Virus record (IMG/VR): IMGVR_UViG_3300020473_000010 | Span: 1 to 64,000 of that record | DNA: 64,000 nucleotides | Reading direction: 5' to 3' (one strand) | Shown here: in pieces, positions 4,599-32,614 of the stretch | Layout of the letters: the number at the start of each line of letters is the position of its first letter | Numbering within the stretch: position 1 is the first letter of the stretch | Translations under genes and position numbers: made by a program | The notes under the pieces: model-generated | Databases searched by the model: none | Told to the model about the DNA's origin: nothing | Seen by the model: the letters and a program-made list of their open reading frames with translations, nothing else

Positions 4599-5117
4599 TT
4601 AAGGGATCCAAAATTTTCCATCCATTTTGTGGAATAATGGATGCATGATATGACCTTCTTTTTCATAGTGTGCATATCCTAAGGCATGCCCTAATTCATG
4701 CTCGTTTATCCACTGTAGGTTTTGAGAACCCGGACGATAAGTTATTACAGCTCCTTTGATTTCGGTGAGCGAAGTCCATCTTCTAGTTTCTGCAAGGACA
4801 CCTGATTCGTGATCAAATCTGCCTCCTTTACGCAAGATAATAAATCCTTCTAAGTATGTATCTTCGCAAAGCATTGGCGGTGGATTATGTTCGTAAAAGC
4901 CAATATCATGACCTTTTTCTTCCCAATAAGTAACAGCACGCTGCATTTGAAGTTCTGAAAAATCATCACCATAACAATTTACTATTATTGGAGGCATATT
5001 ATCTTTCCATTCATACGGCTGAAAAGCTGTAGTTTCATAGACGTATTTTATGCCTGTGCCAAATAAGAACCCACTTAAAAAGCCGAACAATACTTTGATT
5101 ATAATTGATGGTTTCAC
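4599..5117 (-). CDS. Matrixin-like (metzincin) zinc metalloprotease, membrane-anchored
   Basis: HELGHALGYAH extended zinc motif plus Met-turn IMHP; N-terminal hydrophobic anchor. Confidence 0.8.
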   Translation of the reverse strand: MKPSIIIKVLFGFLSGFLFGTGIKYVYETTAFQPYEWKDNMPPIIVNCYGDDFSELQMQRAVTYWEEKGHDIGFYEHNPPPMLCEDTYLEGFIILRKGGRFDHESGVLAETRRWTSLTEIKGAVITYRPGSQNLQWINEHELGHALGYAHYEKEGHIMHPLFHKMDGKFWIP

Positions 5118-27308: not shown

Positions 27309-27509
27309 TCAATCTTTAGATACATTATTGTCCTCCGGTCTAGTTACATAGCCATTCTCTATAAGAGACATTGCAGTGCGCCCATAGTGACCTTGCAGGG
27401 TCCAGGCCTGACCTGTATTTACGAGAGTCTGAAAGAAAACAATGACTTCTTCGAAGTTCATGTTGCCTTCTTCATATTTGATAATATCTTCAACAGATAC
27501 AATATTCAT
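27309..27509 (-). CDS. Conserved small phage protein
   Basis: YEEG..FQ.LV.TG.AW.LQGHYGRTA.LIE.G pattern. Confidence 0.7.
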   Translation of the reverse strand: MNIVSVEDIIKYEEGNMNFEEVIVFFQTLVNTGQAWTLQGHYGRTAMSLIENGYVTRPEDNNVSKD

Positions 27510-27726
27510 AGTTTTTTCCTTTATACCCATATTGAGAGTATTTGCCCTTTGGAATGAGAATTTTCCTCCGGGAATTTTTTGGTTTTTTGAGGCTTTGGTA
27601 GAGAAACGCGTTTACCTTTTTTGTGTTGTTCTGGATGTTCATAGGTGCCATCTGGAGATTTCTCTATAGGATAAACCTTGCGGGTTTTATTTAGGTGGTA
27701 CCACAAATGTCTAAAATATGCTGTAA

Positions 27727-27927
27727 TCATTGGTTAACTCTCCCGATGGCCCATTCTTGTACACGTGACGTTGTATTATCTTGCCAATAAACTGTATATT
27801 CTATCAATCCTTTCCAACCATCCTCTCCATCACTATGATTAATATCAATAATGACACCTCTGAGGGTTTCTCCTGGATCCCAATTTCCTTTGGTATACAC
27901 TAGGTCTCCCTTTATAAAAGATGGCAT
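27727..27927 (-). CDS. SH3/KOW-like miniprotein
   Basis: FIKGDLV..GVII..YTVYWQD. Confidence 0.6.
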   Translation of the reverse strand: MPSFIKGDLVYTKGNWDPGETLRGVIIDINHSDGEDGWKGLIEYTVYWQDNTTSRVQEWAIGRVNQ

Positions 27928-28319
27928 TATCCAACACTCGTAAAAAGACCACGTGTTGCGGTTGAGAGTGCTAGATAGTATCTGTCATTATCGTTAGTAG
28001 TCTTAAAGACTGGAAACTTATCTGTGCGATTAACCCAAAGGCTCATGTGGTCACCATTCCAAAGAGGGTTAGGGTGTGCATTGGCCATTGCCGCGGTTTT
28101 ATACGTGTGGCCCCAAATCCCTGTTGTTTCCCAATTGGGTGACATGTTTCCTTTAAATGCTTTTCGCGAAATGACATATTCTCCGGGTGGGTATACCCCA
28201 AGTTTAATCATGGCTTCCAAAGCACCTCTTGCTTCATGCACCTTTTCAAGTACATGGAGGGGGGCGTCTGATGATAGATTTTTGCAAATCTTAACGTTTG
28301 TTTCTGTTGTATGTGACAT
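27927..28319 (-). CDS. Hypothetical protein
   Basis: RBS AGGAG; in operon. Confidence 0.55.
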   Translation of the reverse strand: MSHTTETNVKICKNLSSDAPLHVLEKVHEARGALEAMIKLGVYPPGEYVISRKAFKGNMSPNWETTGIWGHTYKTAAMANAHPNPLWNGDHMSLWVNRTDKFPVFKTTNDNDRYYLALSTATRGLFTSVG

Positions 28320-28320
28320 G

Positions 28321-28596
28321 CTATGCTCCTTTTACAATGTATGTCTTGCCAATTGGCGTTAGTTTATATCCTGATTTTTTATTATTTGGATTTGTTTTCT
28401 TCCAAAGCATTGGATTATATGAAGGTCCATTTGAAGGGTATTGTGTGAAATATCTTGAGTATTGTCCTCCAATTCTGACAATCTCAAATGCGCTGAACCC
28501 TTTCCAAAGCATTAGATTTCTAATAATTTCTGAGTATTTTGCGCCTGGGTTTTTGTCTATATATGTTGCTATAAACTGTAGGTTATTCATGTTCAT
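28321..28596 (-). CDS. Hypothetical protein, possible winged-helix
   Basis: C-terminal GYKLTPIGKTYI wing-like motif. Confidence 0.5.
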   Translation of the reverse strand: MNMNNLQFIATYIDKNPGAKYSEIIRNLMLWKGFSAFEIVRIGGQYSRYFTQYPSNGPSYNPMLWKKTNPNNKKSGYKLTPIGKTYIVKGA

Positions 28597-28925
28597 TCCT
28601 ATTAATCATAGTGTAAAGTGAGTTGGTTTTGAAAAATTATTCCGGAAAAAAATTTAGAGGTTTGGCCGGCCGGGCTCCCAGAGGTTGCCTCTGAGTATGT
28701 CCTAGGGGGCACTGAGAGGGGCCTTTTTGGGTCATATTTGGGCCCTAATTGGGGGCCCCTCTGGATGGACTATAGGGCTAGGGGGCGCTGGTCCGTACTG
28801 ACACTTAGGCCTACTGGTGGGCCCCTCTCTACTGTAGTACTCTCTCACTGCTTACCTCCCTCTCTGCTTCTCTTACTTACCGCGAGTGAAACAATTTGTT
28901 TCTGTTTTTGTTTCATTGCCGGAAG

Positions 28926-28945
28926 TGAAACATTTGAAACATTCA
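28926..28945. repeat. 20-nt direct repeat copy 1, TGAAACATTTGAAACATTCA
   Basis: Exact copy at 30630-30649; lies in a cluster of GAAACA/TGTTTC motifs. Confidence 0.85.
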
Positions 28946-28995
28946 TGTTACTGTTTGTTTCACCGGCGCCGACTGTAACATTGTATGCACTCATG

Positions 28996-29265
28996 TTACA
29001 CCGGTTCAATCATAGTCATTGGTACAGTCCAGTTCCGGAAAGCTCCGGTGTCGACGATACAGCGAGTGCGGTTGATCTTCACAATGGTACCAGACCTACG
29101 GCCATGATCAAAGGTGACACGCATACCAATATGCAGGCTTCGCTTCTTCTCCGCGATAGTTTTCTTACGCTTGCCATTGAGGATACCATAAGCGGCTTGA
29201 TTGATCATGCGGACTTCGCTATCGCTCATTCCATATAGTGAGTTGATTATTTCTTTGGCAGTCAT
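28996..29265 (-). CDS. Small phage protein with C-terminal SH3/KOW-like domain
   Basis: LHIGMRVTF..GTIVKINRTRCIV; RBS AGGAG. Confidence 0.65.
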   Translation of the reverse strand: MTAKEIINSLYGMSDSEVRMINQAAYGILNGKRKKTIAEKKRSLHIGMRVTFDHGRRSGTIVKINRTRCIVDTGAFRNWTVPMTMIEPV

Positions 29266-29355
29266 TTGTGCTCCTAAGCTATTGATTTTATTAGACTTTT
29301 TAAAAGGGAGGCGGTTTTGTTTTTCCGGGTACCCGCCAAACCGGGAGTAATCGTT

Positions 29356-30102
29356 TTAGTTGGCAGAGACTTTGGCGACCTGACGGAAACCACGCTTACC
29401 AAGAGTGAGGAAGAAGATGTGACCACAGCCACCGAAGCGGTTCTTTTGAACCTCAAGCACTCGGCAACCGATAAGGTCTTGCTCTTTCTTCTCAACAGAG
29501 AGGTGCATGTGCGCATCAACCATATGCTTAAGCTTGTTAGAACCAGCCATCTTACCTTGCTTGTTAACCTGGTTGATGACAATACCGATTGCGGCATGCT
29601 CTTTGCAGAAGTCAGTGATTTGCTCAAGGCATCGAATGGCGGTACCAGAGGTCTTTACACCTGAAGAGTACTTACCATCATCAAGGCACTGAAGAGAGTC
29701 GACAATCAAGACAAACTGCTTACCAGGATTAGCTTCAATAAGTGCCTTGCTTTTCTCGAGCAGTTTACCTACATCATCAGTGTTGCCGCAAAGGAAACCA
29801 TTCTTAAGCTTCAGGCGCTTGGCAGTCATAGAGGTTTGAAAGAGAGACTCCTCAGCTGTATTGAAGAGAGCCACACCACCTTCTTTTGTAATGCTGTCAG
29901 CAATCTTAAGCATCATAGTGGTCTTACCAGCGCCGGGTTCGCCAGTGAAGAGAGTGACTGCAGAGGGAGTGAAACCTTCACCACCGATTGCACCGTCGAC
30001 ATAGGACAGGCCGGTCTTGAACTTCCGGGTGAGGATGTCTGGGACAGAGATGTCAAGAATGTTGGTGCCGAATTCGATGTCAGTGATATTTTTGAGGTTC
30101 AT
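29356..30102 (-). CDS. RadA/Sms-like RecA-family ATPase (ATPase domain only)
   Basis: GEPGAGKTT Walker A, TAEES, LIVDSLQ Walker B, LKHMVDA, KNRFG; no zinc finger or Lon-like domain. Confidence 0.85.
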   Translation of the reverse strand: MNLKNITDIEFGTNILDISVPDILTRKFKTGLSYVDGAIGGEGFTPSAVTLFTGEPGAGKTTMMLKIADSITKEGGVALFNTAEESLFQTSMTAKRLKLKNGFLCGNTDDVGKLLEKSKALIEANPGKQFVLIVDSLQCLDDGKYSSGVKTSGTAIRCLEQITDFCKEHAAIGIVINQVNKQGKMAGSNKLKHMVDAHMHLSVEKKEQDLIGCRVLEVQKNRFGGCGHIFFLTLGKRGFRQVAKVSAN

Positions 30103-30154
30103 GGAGTTTCCTTTTTTAAGGGTGGTTGTTGTAAACGTTGTTGATTATGTATAT

Positions 30155-30183
30155 AATTTAATTAGTTCTGGAGGTTTCTACAC
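30155..30183 (-). promoter_or_regulatory. Phage promoter
   Basis: GTGTAG-17-TAAATT. Confidence 0.6.
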
Positions 30184-30194
30184 GGATTTTTAGT

Positions 30195-30392
30195 TTATGA
30201 TGCAAACTTTTTTAGCTGCAGCTTGCTGGCTTTGCGGCATGCTTTGTTGTATGCCTTGCGCGCGAAGCGGGCAGAGCCACCACATGAGGTTTCCCCGTTG
30301 CGGCCGTAGCGAGACCAGCGGCGTTCGTCCTTTGCGTACTTAACTTCGGTGTTAAGGTTGGCAAGGGTGCGGCGGTGGTTAAGGTTGTTCAT
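30195..30392 (-). CDS. Small basic protein
   Basis: Arg/Lys-rich; RBS GGAG; own promoter. Confidence 0.6.
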   Translation of the reverse strand: MNNLNHRRTLANLNTEVKYAKDERRWSRYGRNGETSCGGSARFARKAYNKACRKASKLQLKKFAS

Positions 30393-30424
30393 AAAAGTAC
30401 TCCGTTGTTTTTTCTTACATATAT

Positions 30425-30453
30425 AATGTAACCCACCTAGATGAACTCTACAC
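30425..30453 (-). promoter_or_regulatory. Phage promoter
   Basis: GTGTAG-17-TACATT. Confidence 0.55.
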
Positions 30454-30629
30454 AGTTATTTAGATTTAAATTGTTTATTTTTTCACTCCGACCCCTACGA
30501 ATTCTTATCCCCTGCCGCGATTCATTCCTATGGCCACACAGAAGACCCGGACTTGCCAAACCTGACTGCTTTTGTAGGGCCCTGGAAACTTTTGACACAA
30601 AATGAAACATGAATTGTTTCACAAAGCGA

Positions 30630-30649
30630 TGAAACATTTGAAACATTCA
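30630..30649. repeat. 20-nt direct repeat copy 2, TGAAACATTTGAAACATTCA
   Basis: Exact copy of 28926-28945; next to inverted repeat TGAAACA..TGTTTCA at 30603-30621. Confidence 0.85.
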
Positions 30650-30891
30650 GTGTTACTTTACATCTTTTTTACAAAATAAATTGTACATTGGCCAGATCCC
30701 GGGCCAAACCTACTCTCTCCTCCCTTCCTCTCATTCTCATTCCGTACCATTCCGTACAATGAATAGTGCACCAGAGGGTACAAGGCTCTCCATGTCATTT
30801 CAGGCATGGTTGTTTGGACATTTAGCCATAGACAGAATCCCATAAGAATGAATGGTCTAATAATGGACGATTGGATGGGATTATTTGTGGG

Positions 30892-31257
30892 CTACATTTT
30901 ATAATAAAGCCAGCTGTAACGTTTTCTTTCTACCAAATAGTCTTCTATATGTTCTTTACAATAGGCTTCTTGTTCAAAAGGAATCAAAAGGTAAGCAATC
31001 CTAGCATCTCTATATATGAATAAACCTTTCAGCCAATAGAGAAGATAAAGGATAGGGAAACCTATAATAAAACAATCTAGATACTGTTGCCAGTGTATAG
31101 TCTCATGTCTCTTTATTTCTTTACTAAGAGGTCCGCTGGAGATTACTAGAGGTCCTAAGGTTATTGCGTTTATATTGATTGGTGCTATCTTGCTTAATAG
31201 CTTTGTTATTGTTGGTGACTCTATGAAGAATGGAGTTGTTTGTTTTAGATATTTCAT
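30892..31257 (-). CDS. HExxH-motif phage protein
   Basis: RHETIHWQQ...PFEQEAY. Confidence 0.65.
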   Translation of the reverse strand: MKYLKQTTPFFIESPTITKLLSKIAPININAITLGPLVISSGPLSKEIKRHETIHWQQYLDCFIIGFPILYLLYWLKGLFIYRDARIAYLLIPFEQEAYCKEHIEDYLVERKRYSWLYYKM

Positions 31258-31508
31258 TTTTTATTACCTGCCGGGCTTTTTATGTTGGTGGGGAAGTATC
31301 GTTCTCTCCATTCTCTTAGTTCCGGCCATCTTTCAAGTCCAACTTCAGAAGCCGAGTTAATTCCAATACTTCGTAATGCTTCAGCCAAGGTGAGGCCGAT
31401 TGTGAGGTTGGCATAAAAACTTACAGCATCTGCTTTTGATAATTCCAATATAGGTTGTAGTTCTTTTACTGCTAAGATTGCTGTGATATCTATAATGTTA
31501 GAAGTCAT
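31254..31508 (-). CDS. Hypothetical protein
   Basis: ATGA overlap with downstream gene. Confidence 0.45.
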   Translation of the reverse strand: MTSNIIDITAILAVKELQPILELSKADAVSFYANLTIGLTLAEALRSIGINSASEVGLERWPELREWRERYFPTNIKSPAGNKK

Positions 31509-31679
31509 TTACTTGCCGGGCTTTATTTTATGAAGAGCAAGGCAGGAGTGGGGACTTATCAAGTCAACACGGATGCATGCTCTCTTATAAATACCATGGT
31601 TATTTCTTTTCCATGGAAAAAATGAGGCTGTCGAACGACGGATGTCGTATATTAAAGGGAAAAGAGGCGCGCGGCGTTT

Positions 31680-31916
31680 TTATTCTTCTTCTCGAGACTT
31701 GGCTGACCACTTAGATTTTGGTAGTTGTTTTTCTATTTTAAACTTGAGAATGGACTTTCCGTTTATTGTTGGATGTCCATATTTGTCTTTGCCGATTTTC
31801 TTTACGATGGTTCTTTTATTCTTAAATCTGCCGGTCAAAATCACATCTCCGACTTTCACGTCGAGAGGAATCGATTCCAAAAGTATCTGCCTTATGTATT
31901 GTCGTAAGTGTTTCAT
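31680..31916 (-). CDS. Leader-bearing small basic protein
   Basis: MKHLRQYIRQILLE + VKVGDVILTGRFKN (KOW-like cargo). Confidence 0.7.
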   Translation of the reverse strand: MKHLRQYIRQILLESIPLDVKVGDVILTGRFKNKRTIVKKIGKDKYGHPTINGKSILKFKIEKQLPKSKWSAKSREEE

Positions 31917-32614
31917 AATCTAAAACTCGCTTTATAAAGATTGTATTCTTTTCCTGTAGAATCATATATCTCATCGAAGACTTTAACCATATCGTCGTAG
32001 TTTTCATCCGGAACAATAACACCGATAGCTTCCCAGTTATCGACCAATGCTTCGTTACCTAAGAAGTCGTCAGGATCCCAATCTTCTCTACTAAGGACTA
32101 TACTCTCATCATCGACAACACCAATACCTTTATTTGCTCCGGAGCTTTTCACTCTTTCCGGATCAGCTTTTTTATAGAATTCTGAATATCCGGTTTGCAG
32201 GGCATCCATATCATTTGCTAGCAATGTTATGTAACCGTTAATTATGAGACCATATTTTCCAAACGCACTAGTTCCAGGCATTTCGCCTGGAAGATAAGCT
32301 GCAGCACTTAATTCATCTCGGGCTGATGGAGACTTAAGCATTTTAATTATTTTAGATAAATCTTTTGACCAATGCACTAACTCTAGAGTATCAATGAATT
32401 TTCTATCTGCATGTTTTGCAAAAGCTTTCTTCATTATTCGACCCATCGCCGCTCGATCTTTATAACCCTGTAATACTTTTTCATCTGGATCAGAGTCTTC
32501 ATCACTGATATCTCGAAATGTGTCATCATAATTCGGGTTGTTTAATAGATCTAGAACGAAAGATTCTCTGTCTTCTAGGAGTATTTGTCTTATATATTGT
32601 CGCAATCGTTTCAT
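31913..32614 (-). CDS. Leader-bearing protein, paralog family KHAD...VHW...ELS...NEALVDNW
   Basis: MKRLRQYIRQILLE; aligns by eye with 33849, 39199, 44413. Confidence 0.7.
   Translation of the reverse strand: MKRLRQYIRQILLEDRESFVLDLLNNPNYDDTFRDISDEDSDPDEKVLQGYKDRAAMGRIMKKAFAKHADRKFIDTLELVHWSKDLSKIIKMLKSPSARDELSAAAYLPGEMPGTSAFGKYGLIINGYITLLANDMDALQTGYSEFYKKADPERVKSSGANKGIGVVDDESIVLSREDWDPDDFLGNEALVDNWEAIGVIVPDENYDDMVKVFDEIYDSTGKEYNLYKASFRL

What the first reader, a model, noticed from the sequence alone, without database searches (positions are those of the whole stretch)
28650..30900. GC-richer island bracketed by an exact 20-nt repeat and GAAACA clusters: candidate genome terminus or origin
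Seen: composition and codon use visibly shift to higher GC. Both flanks lack convincing genes and contain TGAAACATTTGAAACATTCA (28926, 30630), palindromes GAAACA-ATT-TGTTTC (28888-28902) and TGAAACA..TGTTTCA (30603-30621), GGGCCC-rich hairpins and pyrimidine tracts (28830-28880, 30713-30760). Two strong promoters drive three genes inside. The island also separates the early miniprotein region from the leader-gene region. Inference: iterated binding sites for terminase or a replication initiator, a terminal-repeat junction, or a recently acquired module.
Basis: partly seen in the sequence, partly recalled or inferred. Interest (0 to 1): 0.6.

Follow-up and report, generated by a model that had tools for sequence, protein, structure and literature searches.

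The report
Conserved iteron arrays around phage mini-RadA cassette
The GC-rich island is a real, conserved control region of an uncultured marine T4-like jumbo phage. Two arrays of a short protein-binding motif bracket a small variable gene cassette that always holds a cut-down RadA helicase. The region looks most like a replication-origin or regulatory site, not a genome end or a recent import.

Summary
The exact 20-nt repeat has only two copies in the 288,697-bp genome. The two GAAACA clusters are the densest in the genome and beyond simulated chance. The three minus-strand genes have GC3 of 0.53-0.65 against a genome mean of 0.26.

The architecture recurs at the syntenic place in related marine jumbo-phage contigs. 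G(A/T)AACA arrays bracket a 1.7-3.7 kb cassette in 9 of 12 loci. Only one cassette gene is constant: a 248-aa RadA/Sms ATPase-only protein. Array B is followed by a purine tract, then eight phased GGCCC boxes (spacing 12-13 and 21-22 bp), a conserved ~30-bp box, an A/T-rich UP-like stretch and a promoter. That promoter heads the early miniprotein array.

- **RNA:** no structure signal and no Rfam match.
- **Repeats:** nothing repeated beyond the arrays.
- **Skew:** no inflection at the island.
- **Contigs:** contigs from other samples bridge both flanks.
- **Packaging:** the terminase is T4 gp17-type and lies 150 kb away.

A terminal-repeat junction and a recent acquisition are therefore not supported. 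Iterated binding sites are supported. I favour an iteron-type origin or nucleoprotein control region (about 0.4). Operator arrays are the close rival. Read starts could not be tested.

The parts
30711..30760 (-). Purine-rich tract on the gene strand (pyrimidine-rich on +), upstream of array A
   Evidence: 80% pyrimidine on the + strand, among the top ~0.1% of 50-nt windows. It shows marginal direct similarity to the tract at 28826-28882.
30680..30707 (-). Sigma-70-like promoter match (PA) just upstream of array A; a weak call
   Evidence: Consensus scan gives TTGGCC-16-TACAAT. The block is conserved in L014 and L020. The number of scan hits is not above the shuffles.
30603..30657 (.). Array A: five G(A/T)AACA sites, including the 20-nt repeat (30630-30649) and the palindrome at 30603-30621
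30559..30582 (-). Conserved 24-nt box between array A and promoter P1
   Evidence: Identical over 21 nt in L003. Variants occur in L014, L016 and L018.
30405..30453 (-). Promoter P1 of the GTGTAG...ATTATATATGTAAG class
   Evidence: About 8 copies genome-wide, each directly before an ORF. 30 nt are identical to the copy at 156 kb. Conserved in L003, L014, L018, L020 and L022.
30195..30392 (-). 65-aa very basic protein (P0003), GC3 0.65
   Evidence: The only homolog among the loci is in L014. No family match.
30135..30183 (-). Promoter P2, same class as P1
29356..30102 (-). 248-aa RadA/Sms-like ATPase-only protein ('mini-RadA', P0001), GC3 0.53
   Evidence: TIGR00416 gives E 2.9e-28 over positions 73-284 of 454. 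PDB RadA 5lkm gives 1.9e-16. Pfam hits are KaiC and RecA. The KNRFG motif is in the translation. 1754 relatives of 248-251 aa.
29266..29301 (-). Third promoter/RBS cassette directly before P0002; the same motif recurs around the arrays in L004, L014 and L016
28996..29265 (-). 89-aa protein (P0002): long helix plus SH3/KOW-like barrel; the last cassette gene
   Evidence: Model pLDDT 82. Fold hits are the MscS beta-domain and KOW. The Atlas places it near DUF7205-type viral proteins. Homologs lie in L014, L016 and L018. Absent from the L003 genome.
28888..28999 (.). Array B: nine G(A/T)AACA sites, including the 20-nt repeat (28926-28945) and the palindrome at 28888-28902. A sigma-70-like match at 29009-28980 overlaps its first sites.
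28826..28882 (-). Purine-rich (GA) tract on the gene strand, after array B
   Evidence: 79% pyrimidine on +. Present wherever array B is present and missing in L004 and L020, which lack arrays.
28703..28826 (-). Phased array of (G/A)GCCC boxes: pairs 12-13 bp apart, with 21-22 bp between pairs
   Evidence: Densest GGGCC/GGCCC cluster in the genome. Box spacings across 11 loci fall mostly at 11-14, 20-23 or 32-37 bp.
28673..28702 (-). Conserved ~30-bp box containing CATACTCAG
   Evidence: Nearly invariant core in 6 aligned loci. Also found in L020, L022, L028, L029 and L123.
28605..28662 (-). A/T-rich UP-element-like stretch around a TTCCGGAA palindrome, plus a sigma-70-like promoter (PE) heading the miniprotein array
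   Evidence: Scan gives TTCAAA-17-TATGAT. Palindrome I6. Conserved in relatives.
28321..28596 (-). 91-aa first gene after the control region (context); GC3 0.29
   Evidence: Homolog in the same position in L003, L004, L014, L016 and L018. GC3.

Best explanation
The island is a unique, vertically inherited control region of a clade of uncultured marine T4-superfamily jumbo myoviruses.

**Anatomy (shown).**
- Two arrays of 5-9 copies of a 7-bp site (TGAAACA or TGTAACA) bracket a small hyperplastic cassette. The sites occur in both orientations with variable spacing.
- The only constant cassette gene is an ATPase-only RadA helicase homolog.
- After the downstream array come a purine tract, eight phased GGCCC boxes, a conserved ~30-bp box, an A/T-rich stretch and a promoter. 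That promoter starts the early miniprotein genes.

**Mechanism (inferred).**
- Both motif sets are iteron-like binding sites for sequence-specific DNA-binding protein(s). The binder is encoded outside the cassette or by the host.
- The bound proteins build a nucleoprotein complex that acts as a replication origin.
- Neighbouring promoters fire into the arrays and the purine tract and so activate the origin. The A/T-rich stretch serves as the unwinding region.
- The model is T4 oriE (iterons plus an early promoter) or the two-cluster ori/crr layout of P4.

The region is neither a packaged-DNA end nor a recent import.
For: **Unique and non-random.**
- The motif clusters are the two densest in 289 kb and beyond simulation.
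- The GGCCC cluster is also the densest in the genome.
- The 20-mer has only two copies.

**Conserved by function rather than by sequence.**
- Arrays are present in 9 of 12 loci. The number of sites is kept, but order, orientation and spacing are reshuffled.
- Arrays persist across two unrelated types of upstream flank.
- GGCCC box spacing of 12-13 and 21-22 bp is kept while the spacers diverge.
- The array, GGCCC boxes, box and T-run recur even in L123, which has no mini-RadA nearby.

**Not RNA.**
- Folding z-scores are about 0.
- RNAalifold gives -9 kcal/mol with an unfavourable covariation term.
- There is no Rfam match.

**Origin-like context.**
- Promoter matches sit at or inside both arrays.
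- A purine tract follows array B, and an A/T-rich stretch follows the boxes.
- A helicase gene lies between the arrays.
- T4 oriE has conserved iterons and depends on an early promoter (PMC3016281).

**Regional effect.** All genes between the arrays, whatever their identity, have raised GC3, with sharp edges. This fits a local recombination or replication regime.
Against: - No initiation event, binding protein or read-level signal was observed.
- No Rep_3 or ParB-type protein is encoded.
- No cassette gene other than mini-RadA is shared by all array-bearing loci. P0002 is absent from the L003 genome.
- The replisome genes lie more than 100 kb away.
- There is no GC-skew step at the island, even at four-fold sites.
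- Three relatives (L004, L020, L021) lack the GAAACA arrays, so the arrays are dispensable.
- Many sites form short palindromes and interleave with promoter cassettes. That fits operators equally well.
- For T4 itself, the iterons have never been tied to oriE activity.
Confidence: 0.4

Rival explanations
1. Operator arrays. A dimeric phage or host regulator binds the TGAAACA sites at both cassette borders, possibly with DNA looping as at lambda OL/OR. It controls the promoters that read into the cassette and into the early miniprotein array. The GGCCC boxes would be an upstream activating array for the early promoter PE.
For: - The core sites are short palindromes of the form GAAACA-N3-TGTTTC.
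- The sites flank or overlap promoter matches and the repeated promoter cassette in WIN, L014, L016 and L022.
- The two clusters lie 1.7-3.7 kb apart.
- The arrays are dispensable in three relatives.
- The GGCCC boxes lie directly upstream of a UP-like element and promoter.
Against: - Half-site spacing ranges from N0 to N6, and there are many tandem 9-bp direct repeats. Both are unusual for a fixed dimer.
- There are 5-9 sites per array, and only one locus per genome.
- No regulator gene is conserved inside the cassette.
- The motif matches none of the LexA motifs listed in PMC8565304.
Confidence: 0.3
2. Borders of an exchangeable module. The arrays and repeated promoter cassettes are recombination substrates, like PeSL elements in T4-type hyperplastic regions. 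They let co-infecting phages swap accessory genes, or let the cassette loop out as a circle.
For: - Gene content between the arrays differs among relatives. It includes SprT-like and HSP20 genes, tRNAs and small ORFs.
- Direct repeats flank the cassette in WIN, L003 and L004.
- Cassette GC3 is about 0.5-0.6 whatever the backbone GC.
- PeSL elements give a precedent (PMC4122927; PMC2839356).
Against: - ATPase and flank identities rank alike, so there is no sign of transfer.
- No back-joining contig linked the two repeats.
- PeSLs occur many times per genome, whereas these arrays occur once.
- This reading does not explain the phased GGCCC boxes.
Confidence: 0.13
3. Packaging site or physical genome end. 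The phased boxes and arrays would be terminase small-subunit binding sites at a pac site or a short terminal repeat, placed next to the first early promoter as in T7, T5 or SPO1.
For: - The element is unique in the genome, has iterated phased motifs and lies directly upstream of the early array.
- Assemblies cannot exclude a collapsed short terminal repeat.
Against: - No repeat extends beyond the arrays.
- Contigs from three samples bridge both flanks.
- The assembly is circular.
- Contig ends of relatives fall at unrelated places.
- TerL is of the T4 gp17 lineage, and T4 has no defined telomeres (PMC3016281).
Confidence: 0.07
4. Recently acquired foreign island, which would explain the GC shift.
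For: Composition and GC3 are extreme for this genome. A short direct repeat flanks the island.
Against: - Position is syntenic and architecture conserved in all relatives.
- Nucleotide identity to the nearest fetched relative is only 0.80.
- No integrase or transposase is present.
- The same GC3 excess is seen in the relatives.
Confidence: 0.03

Closest known systems
Bacteriophage T4 oriE iteron cluster
   Same: Both are T4-superfamily genomes. Both have a cluster of short repeats that is conserved at a syntenic place in relatives and lies next to an early-type promoter. In both, the role of the repeats is unproven (PMC3016281).
   Different: [quoted passage not shown] Here there are two arrays of a 7-bp site in mixed orientation, plus a second array of phased GGCCC boxes. 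No RepEA or RepEB counterpart was identified.
Two-cluster iteron replicons (P4 ori/crr; P1 oriR-repA-incA); from my own knowledge
   Same: Two clusters of short sites, in direct and inverted orientation, lie a few kb apart and flank a replication gene.
   Different: No cognate initiator is encoded here. Rep_3 and ParB searches were blank. The enclosed helicase is RadA-like and has no evident DNA-recognition domain.
Lambda OL/OR operator clusters with looping; from my own knowledge
   Same: Two clusters of imperfect palindromic sites about 2 kb apart bracket a small gene block and sit at promoters.
   Different: The promoters here are not divergent, no repressor gene is recognisable, half-site spacing varies, and there are more sites per cluster.
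PeSL promoter/stem-loop cassettes and hyperplastic regions of T4-type phages
   Same: A variable block of small accessory genes lies between conserved repeated regulatory motifs in a T4-like genome (PMC4122927). A repeated promoter/RBS cassette flanks the genes in L004, L014 and L016, with one copy in the window.
   Different: PeSLs are dispersed many times per genome. The GAAACA arrays and GGCCC boxes occur once and are not promoter-terminator units.
Bacterial RadA/Sms branch-migration helicase
   Same: The RecA-fold ATPase domain carries Walker motifs and the KNRFG motif.
   Different: It lacks the N-terminal zinc finger and the C-terminal Lon-like domain. The length is 248 aa against about 450, and it scores 98.8 bits against the equivalog cut-off of 403.
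Chromosomal parS (ParB/Spo0J site); consensus from my own knowledge
   Same: The 8-mer GTGAAACA/TGTTTCAC found in 4 of the window's 10 sites equals a parS half-site.
   Different: No canonical 16-bp parS lies in any array. The best cases have one or two central bases missing. No ParB is encoded. This is a lead only.

Membership tests
Iteron-type replication origin | Multiple copies of a short binding motif clustered at one locus | tested here: met
Iteron-type replication origin | Adjacent A/T-rich unwinding element | tested here: inconclusive
   A conserved A/T-rich stretch follows the boxes, and an A/T-rich run adjoins array A. In a 36% GC genome this is not distinctive, and it also reads as a UP element.
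Iteron-type replication origin | Cognate initiator encoded nearby that binds the iterons | tested here: not met
   No Rep_3 or ParB is encoded. The only gene common to array-bearing cassettes is mini-RadA. P0002 has no recognisable DNA-binding fold.
Iteron-type replication origin | Replication shown to start there, or a strand-skew switch | tested here: inconclusive
   No skew step was found. Initiation cannot be mapped with these tools.
Genome terminus / pac or cos site / terminal-repeat junction | Read starts or a coverage step at the site | not testable with these tools
   All runs are held as contigs only.
Genome terminus / pac or cos site / terminal-repeat junction | Extended terminal repeat or homology outside the short motifs | tested here: not met
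   Local alignment of the outer flanks does not exceed shuffles in 6 loci.
Genome terminus / pac or cos site / terminal-repeat junction | Terminase type known to cut at fixed sites | tested here: not met
   TerL groups with T4 gp17-type terminases. The link to packaging mode is an inference from the family.
Horizontally acquired genomic island | Atypical composition | tested here: met
Horizontally acquired genomic island | Absent from, or differently placed in, close relatives; mobility genes present | tested here: not met
   The island is syntenic in all relatives and carries no integrase or transposase.
PeSL-bounded hyperplastic region of T4-type phages | T4-superfamily backbone | tested here: met
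   MCP, sheath and TerL matches
PeSL-bounded hyperplastic region of T4-type phages | Variable gene content between conserved repeated promoter/terminator motifs | tested here: inconclusive
   Content is variable. The promoter cassette is repeated in L004, L014 and L016 but occurs only once in the window. No stem-loop part was shown.
RadA/Sms | RecA-like ATPase with Walker A/B and the KNRFG motif | tested here: met
RadA/Sms | N-terminal zinc finger and C-terminal Lon-like domain | tested here: not met
   The match covers only positions 73-284 of 454, and the protein is 248 aa.
Structured non-coding RNA | Stable or covarying secondary structure, or an Rfam match | tested here: not met

The most novel reading that the evidence does not exclude
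The array-bracketed cassette is a self-contained mini-replicon inside the phage genome. Recombination between the direct-repeat arrays would release a 1.7-3.7 kb circle. The circle would carry iterons, promoters and its own RadA-type helicase. It would be amplified during infection and traded among co-infecting jumbo phages. This would explain why every gene between the arrays keeps a common high GC3 of about 0.5-0.65 on backbones whose GC3 ranges from 0.26 to 0.5.
Probability: 0.1. Interest if true: 0.8.

Novelty: new variant of a known kind. Interest (0 to 1): 0.5.

Why it matters
Replication origins and master control sites of uncultured jumbo phages are essentially unmapped. Even in T4 the role of the oriE iterons is unresolved.

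This region gives a sharply defined, unique and conserved composite element. It combines two motif systems, fixed phasing of the boxes and an adjoining early promoter. It could be tested directly for origin activity, protein binding or packaging.

The element also marks the edges of a gene-turnover hot spot with its own base composition. That makes the link between local DNA transactions and GC3 testable in a virus. Finally, the ATPase-only RadA family (about 1,750 members) is a widespread and uncharacterised phage recombination or helicase gene.

Tried and rejected
- **Nearest phages.** Megablast of the island against GenBank phages found nothing.
- **RNA.** Rfam on the window and on 7 relatives found only two tRNAs, in L014. 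Single-sequence folds and RNAalifold of the GC-rich element and of the upstream block gave no structure.
- **Small ORF.** A small ORF in the purine/GC-rich stretch starts with ATG only in L003 and L016 and is not conserved (reading).
- **Terminal repeats.** Terminal inverted or direct repeats outside the arrays are absent.
- **P0002 as the binder.** It is absent from the L003 genome, and its fold is not informative.
- **Known initiators.** Rep_3 and ParB searches of the genome were blank.
- **Host LexA.** The published LexA motifs do not match.
- **Canonical parS.** None lies in the arrays.
- **Skew.** GC skew has no inflection at the island, in 1-kb windows or at four-fold sites.
- **Promoter-class effect on GC3.** Other genes behind the same promoter class have ordinary GC3.
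- **Pattern scans of viral contigs.** The 17-mer gave one chance hit, L013. The 14-mer gave more than 119 hits, mostly chance. The only relative it added beyond the L003 genome was L123.
- **Reads.** Only Logan contigs exist for the holder runs, so starts, ends and depth could not be read.
- **One joint.** In X1 a joint runs from 28387 to 31467, skipping 3,079 bp, but it rests on 21 letters on one side. I do not count it.
- **TRF.** It does not see the ~34-bp unit. The phasing comes from my own box-spacing count.
Full report
**What the genome is.** The window is the first 64 kb of a 288,697-bp IMG/VR virus contig. Its last 49 nt repeat nt 5-53, so the assembly closes on itself and the contig ends are arbitrary. 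Nearly all ORFs lie on the minus strand. The tail sheath, a gp23-type major head protein and the large terminase place it in the T4 superfamily, but far from any isolate. The head protein is about 44% and TerL about 41% identical to a Flavobacterium phage, and TerL is about 30% identical to T4-like cyanophages. TerL lies at 181.8-183.4 kb and a DnaB-like helicase at 134.5-135.9 kb. The island is therefore 100-150 kb from both the packaging and the replisome genes.

**Checking the observation.** Every listed feature is present.
- The 20-nt repeat is exact and has only two copies in the genome.
- The two GAAACA/TGTTTC clusters (6 in 75 bp and 4 in 42 bp) are the two densest in the genome. They exceed the densest cluster in 100 and 99, respectively, of 100 Markov-simulated genomes.
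- The 1-kb window at 29001 has GC 0.473 against a mean of 0.363 (sd 0.032).
- GC3 gives a sharper picture: 0.65, 0.53 and 0.53 for the three ORFs, against 0.29 for both neighbouring genes and 0.263 (sd 0.054) genome-wide. The ATPase is the strongest outlier of 213 ORFs.
- The GGGCC/GGCCC cluster at 28719-28824 is the densest in the genome.
- Both pyrimidine tracts are in the top 0.1-0.3% of windows.
- The 'hairpins' are not supported. Both strands of 28640-28890 fold no better than shuffles.

**The genes.**
- P0001 (29356-30102, minus) is the ATPase domain of RadA/Sms, with Walker motifs and KNRFG. It lacks the zinc finger and the Lon-like domain. It belongs to a large family of 248-251-aa proteins from marine metagenomes (1754 at E <= 1e-10).
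- P0002 (89 aa) models as a long helix plus an SH3/KOW-like barrel and resembles DUF7205-type viral proteins.
- P0003 (65 aa) is very basic and has no family.
- Two copies of a roughly 45-nt promoter-like motif precede P0003 and P0001. The motif has about 8 copies in the genome, each just before an ORF.
- A different promoter/RBS cassette precedes P0002.

**Relatives.** I fetched eleven related loci through the ATPase, L003 to L029. A twelfth, L123, came from a DNA pattern scan.
- Flanking genes are homologous and in the same order.
- G(A/T)AACA arrays bracket the cassette in the window, L003, L014, L016, L018, L022, L027 and L029. In L028 the upstream side is cut off. L004, L020 and L021 have no arrays.
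- The distance between the arrays is 1.7-3.7 kb.
- Site number is kept, while order, orientation and spacing differ. Recurrent sub-arrangements are the 9-bp tandem (the window's 20-mer) and GAAACA-N2-6-TGTTTC palindromes.
- The arrays persist across two unrelated kinds of upstream flank.
- Cassette content varies and includes SprT-like and HSP20 genes, two tRNAs and small ORFs. Only mini-RadA is constant.
- P0002 homologs are the last cassette gene in four loci. They are absent from the L003 genome, which keeps its arrays.
- It follows that no cassette-encoded protein other than mini-RadA is common to all array-bearing loci.

**The downstream composite element.** After array B come three parts. 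First is a purine-rich tract, present only where arrays are present. Then come (G/A)GCCC boxes, a nearly invariant box containing CATACTCAG, and an A/T-rich stretch around a TTCCGGAA-type palindrome. Last are a sigma-70-like promoter match and a conserved 91-aa gene that opens the miniprotein array. Box spacing is strikingly regular across 11 loci, alternating 12-13 and 21-22 bp. This gives four units of about 34-35 bp, although the spacer sequences differ. The element is found in 10 of the 12 loci. It also occurs in L123 without a nearby mini-RadA. It is therefore tied to the head of the early region rather than to the helicase gene.

**What it is not.**
- *Not a structured RNA.* There is no Rfam match, no stability signal and no covariation.
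- *Not a transposon-like element or a terminal-repeat junction.* The outer flanks share nothing beyond chance, either direct or inverted.
- *Not a recent import.* Position and architecture are shared. ATPase identities to the window rank L014 > L016 > L003, L018 > L004, the same order as the flanking 91-aa gene. Nucleotide identity to the closest fetched relative is only 0.80. The relatives show the same GC3 excess.
- *No assembly break.* One 23-kb contig in X1 spans the region, and low-coverage contigs from two other samples bridge both arrays. This cannot exclude a collapsed short terminal repeat, and read starts were not available. However, the TerL lineage is that of T4, whose genome is circularly permuted without telomeres.
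- *No skew signal.* Neither 1-kb windows nor four-fold sites show a step at the island.

**How it most likely works.**
- *Shown.* There are two conserved, unique systems of iterated DNA motifs. One has fixed phasing. Both lie next to promoter matches, at the boundary between a variable cassette and the early gene array.
- *Inferred.* The motifs are protein-binding sites.
- *Origin reading (about 0.4).* I favour an origin-type nucleoprotein complex for five reasons: uniqueness, high site number, mixed orientation, evolutionary reshuffling that keeps site number, and the sequence promoter, iterons, purine tract, A/T-rich stretch. The precedent in this superfamily is T4 oriE, which has iterons conserved in relatives and depends on an early promoter, with its role still unproven.
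- *Operator reading (about 0.3).* The close rival is an operator/enhancer system that controls the border promoters, with the GGCCC boxes acting as an upstream array for the early promoter.
- *Other readings.* A module-exchange role (0.13) and a packaging role (0.07) remain possible. The origin, operator and module-exchange readings are not mutually exclusive.

**The GC3 island.** All genes between the arrays, whatever their identity, have GC3 of about 0.5-0.7. The edges are sharp in the window, L003, L014 and L016, and weaker in L018 and L022. Other genes behind the same promoter class have ordinary GC3. Cassette GC3 is similar across backbones of different GC. I have no tested explanation. 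Candidates are GC-biased repair at a recombination or replication hot spot, and a shared exchangeable gene pool.

**Leads not confirmed.**
- The 8-mer in 4 of the window's 10 sites equals a parS half-site (consensus from my own knowledge). No canonical parS occurs in any array, and the phage encodes no ParB.
- None of the LexA motifs listed in PMC8565304 fits.

**Verdict.** The terminus-junction and recent-acquisition readings do not, and the origin versus regulator question is open. I rate it a new variant of known kinds (iteron arrays, T4-type hyperplastic regions) in an uncultured phage clade, of moderate interest.

No alternative genetic code was used, and no step needed referral.

Noticed in passing
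window 31.9-39.2 kb (gene starts near 31919, 32626, 33204, 36758, 37946, 39186); also 52-58 kb, and 88-89 kb and 108-109 kb of the genome: Two families of genes share near-identical N-terminal leaders of about 14 residues. One reads MK.LRQYIRQ.LLE and the other MKITKRQLKRIIREE. Both end in an (I/L)-x-E motif. This recalls the capsid-targeting sequences of T4 internal proteins, which the prohead protease cleaves (my own knowledge). They may mark proteins that are packed into the head and injected.
   Followed up: partly
genome nt 5-53 and 288649-288697: The last 49 nt of the contig repeat nt 5-53. The assembly is therefore circular, although the source labels it 'linear'. A second assembly of 288,796 bp carries the same ATPase.
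   Followed up: partly
window 30405-30453, 30135-30183, 46.8 kb, 49.9 kb, 59.8 kb; genome 85.0, 155.1 and 156.1 kb: This is a rare promoter-like class. It has a GTGTAG box, about 19 nt, then ATTATATAyrTAA, and an RBS and ATG about 20 nt on. There are about 8 copies, all on the gene strand, and the class is conserved in relatives. It may be a middle-type promoter with an activator box.
   Followed up: partly
L014 5050-5123 and 5323-5395: A relative's cassette between the arrays carries two tRNA genes (72 and 64 bits).
   Followed up: no
window 30892-31257 (minus): The 121-aa gene just upstream of the island matches PHROG 15610 ('protease') and contains an H-E-x-x-H motif. Relatives carry a SprT-like metalloprotease inside the cassette instead.
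   Followed up: no
window 28640-28647; L020 about 5010-5025: The conserved A/T-rich stretch is centred on a TTCCGGAA-type palindrome, which reads TTTCCCGGGAA in L020. It is flanked by T and A runs and could be a protein site of its own rather than only a UP element.
   Followed up: no
window 27500-32000, run X1: One low-depth contig joins 28387 to 31467 with 38 other letters in between, which would be a relative lacking the whole island. Only 21 letters fit on one side, so I did not rely on it.
   Followed up: no
genome 71675-71730 and 282499-282537: There is an 18-bp tandem repeat with three exact copies at 71.7 kb, and a roughly 39-nt perfect palindrome at 282.5 kb.
   Followed up: no
genome 137.0-138.1 kb (minus): A third RecA-fold protein (at least 391 aa) gives a weak DnaB_C match and lies near the DnaB-like helicase. 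It could be a UvsX/RecA-type recombinase, so mini-RadA is not the phage's only recombination ATPase.
   Followed up: no
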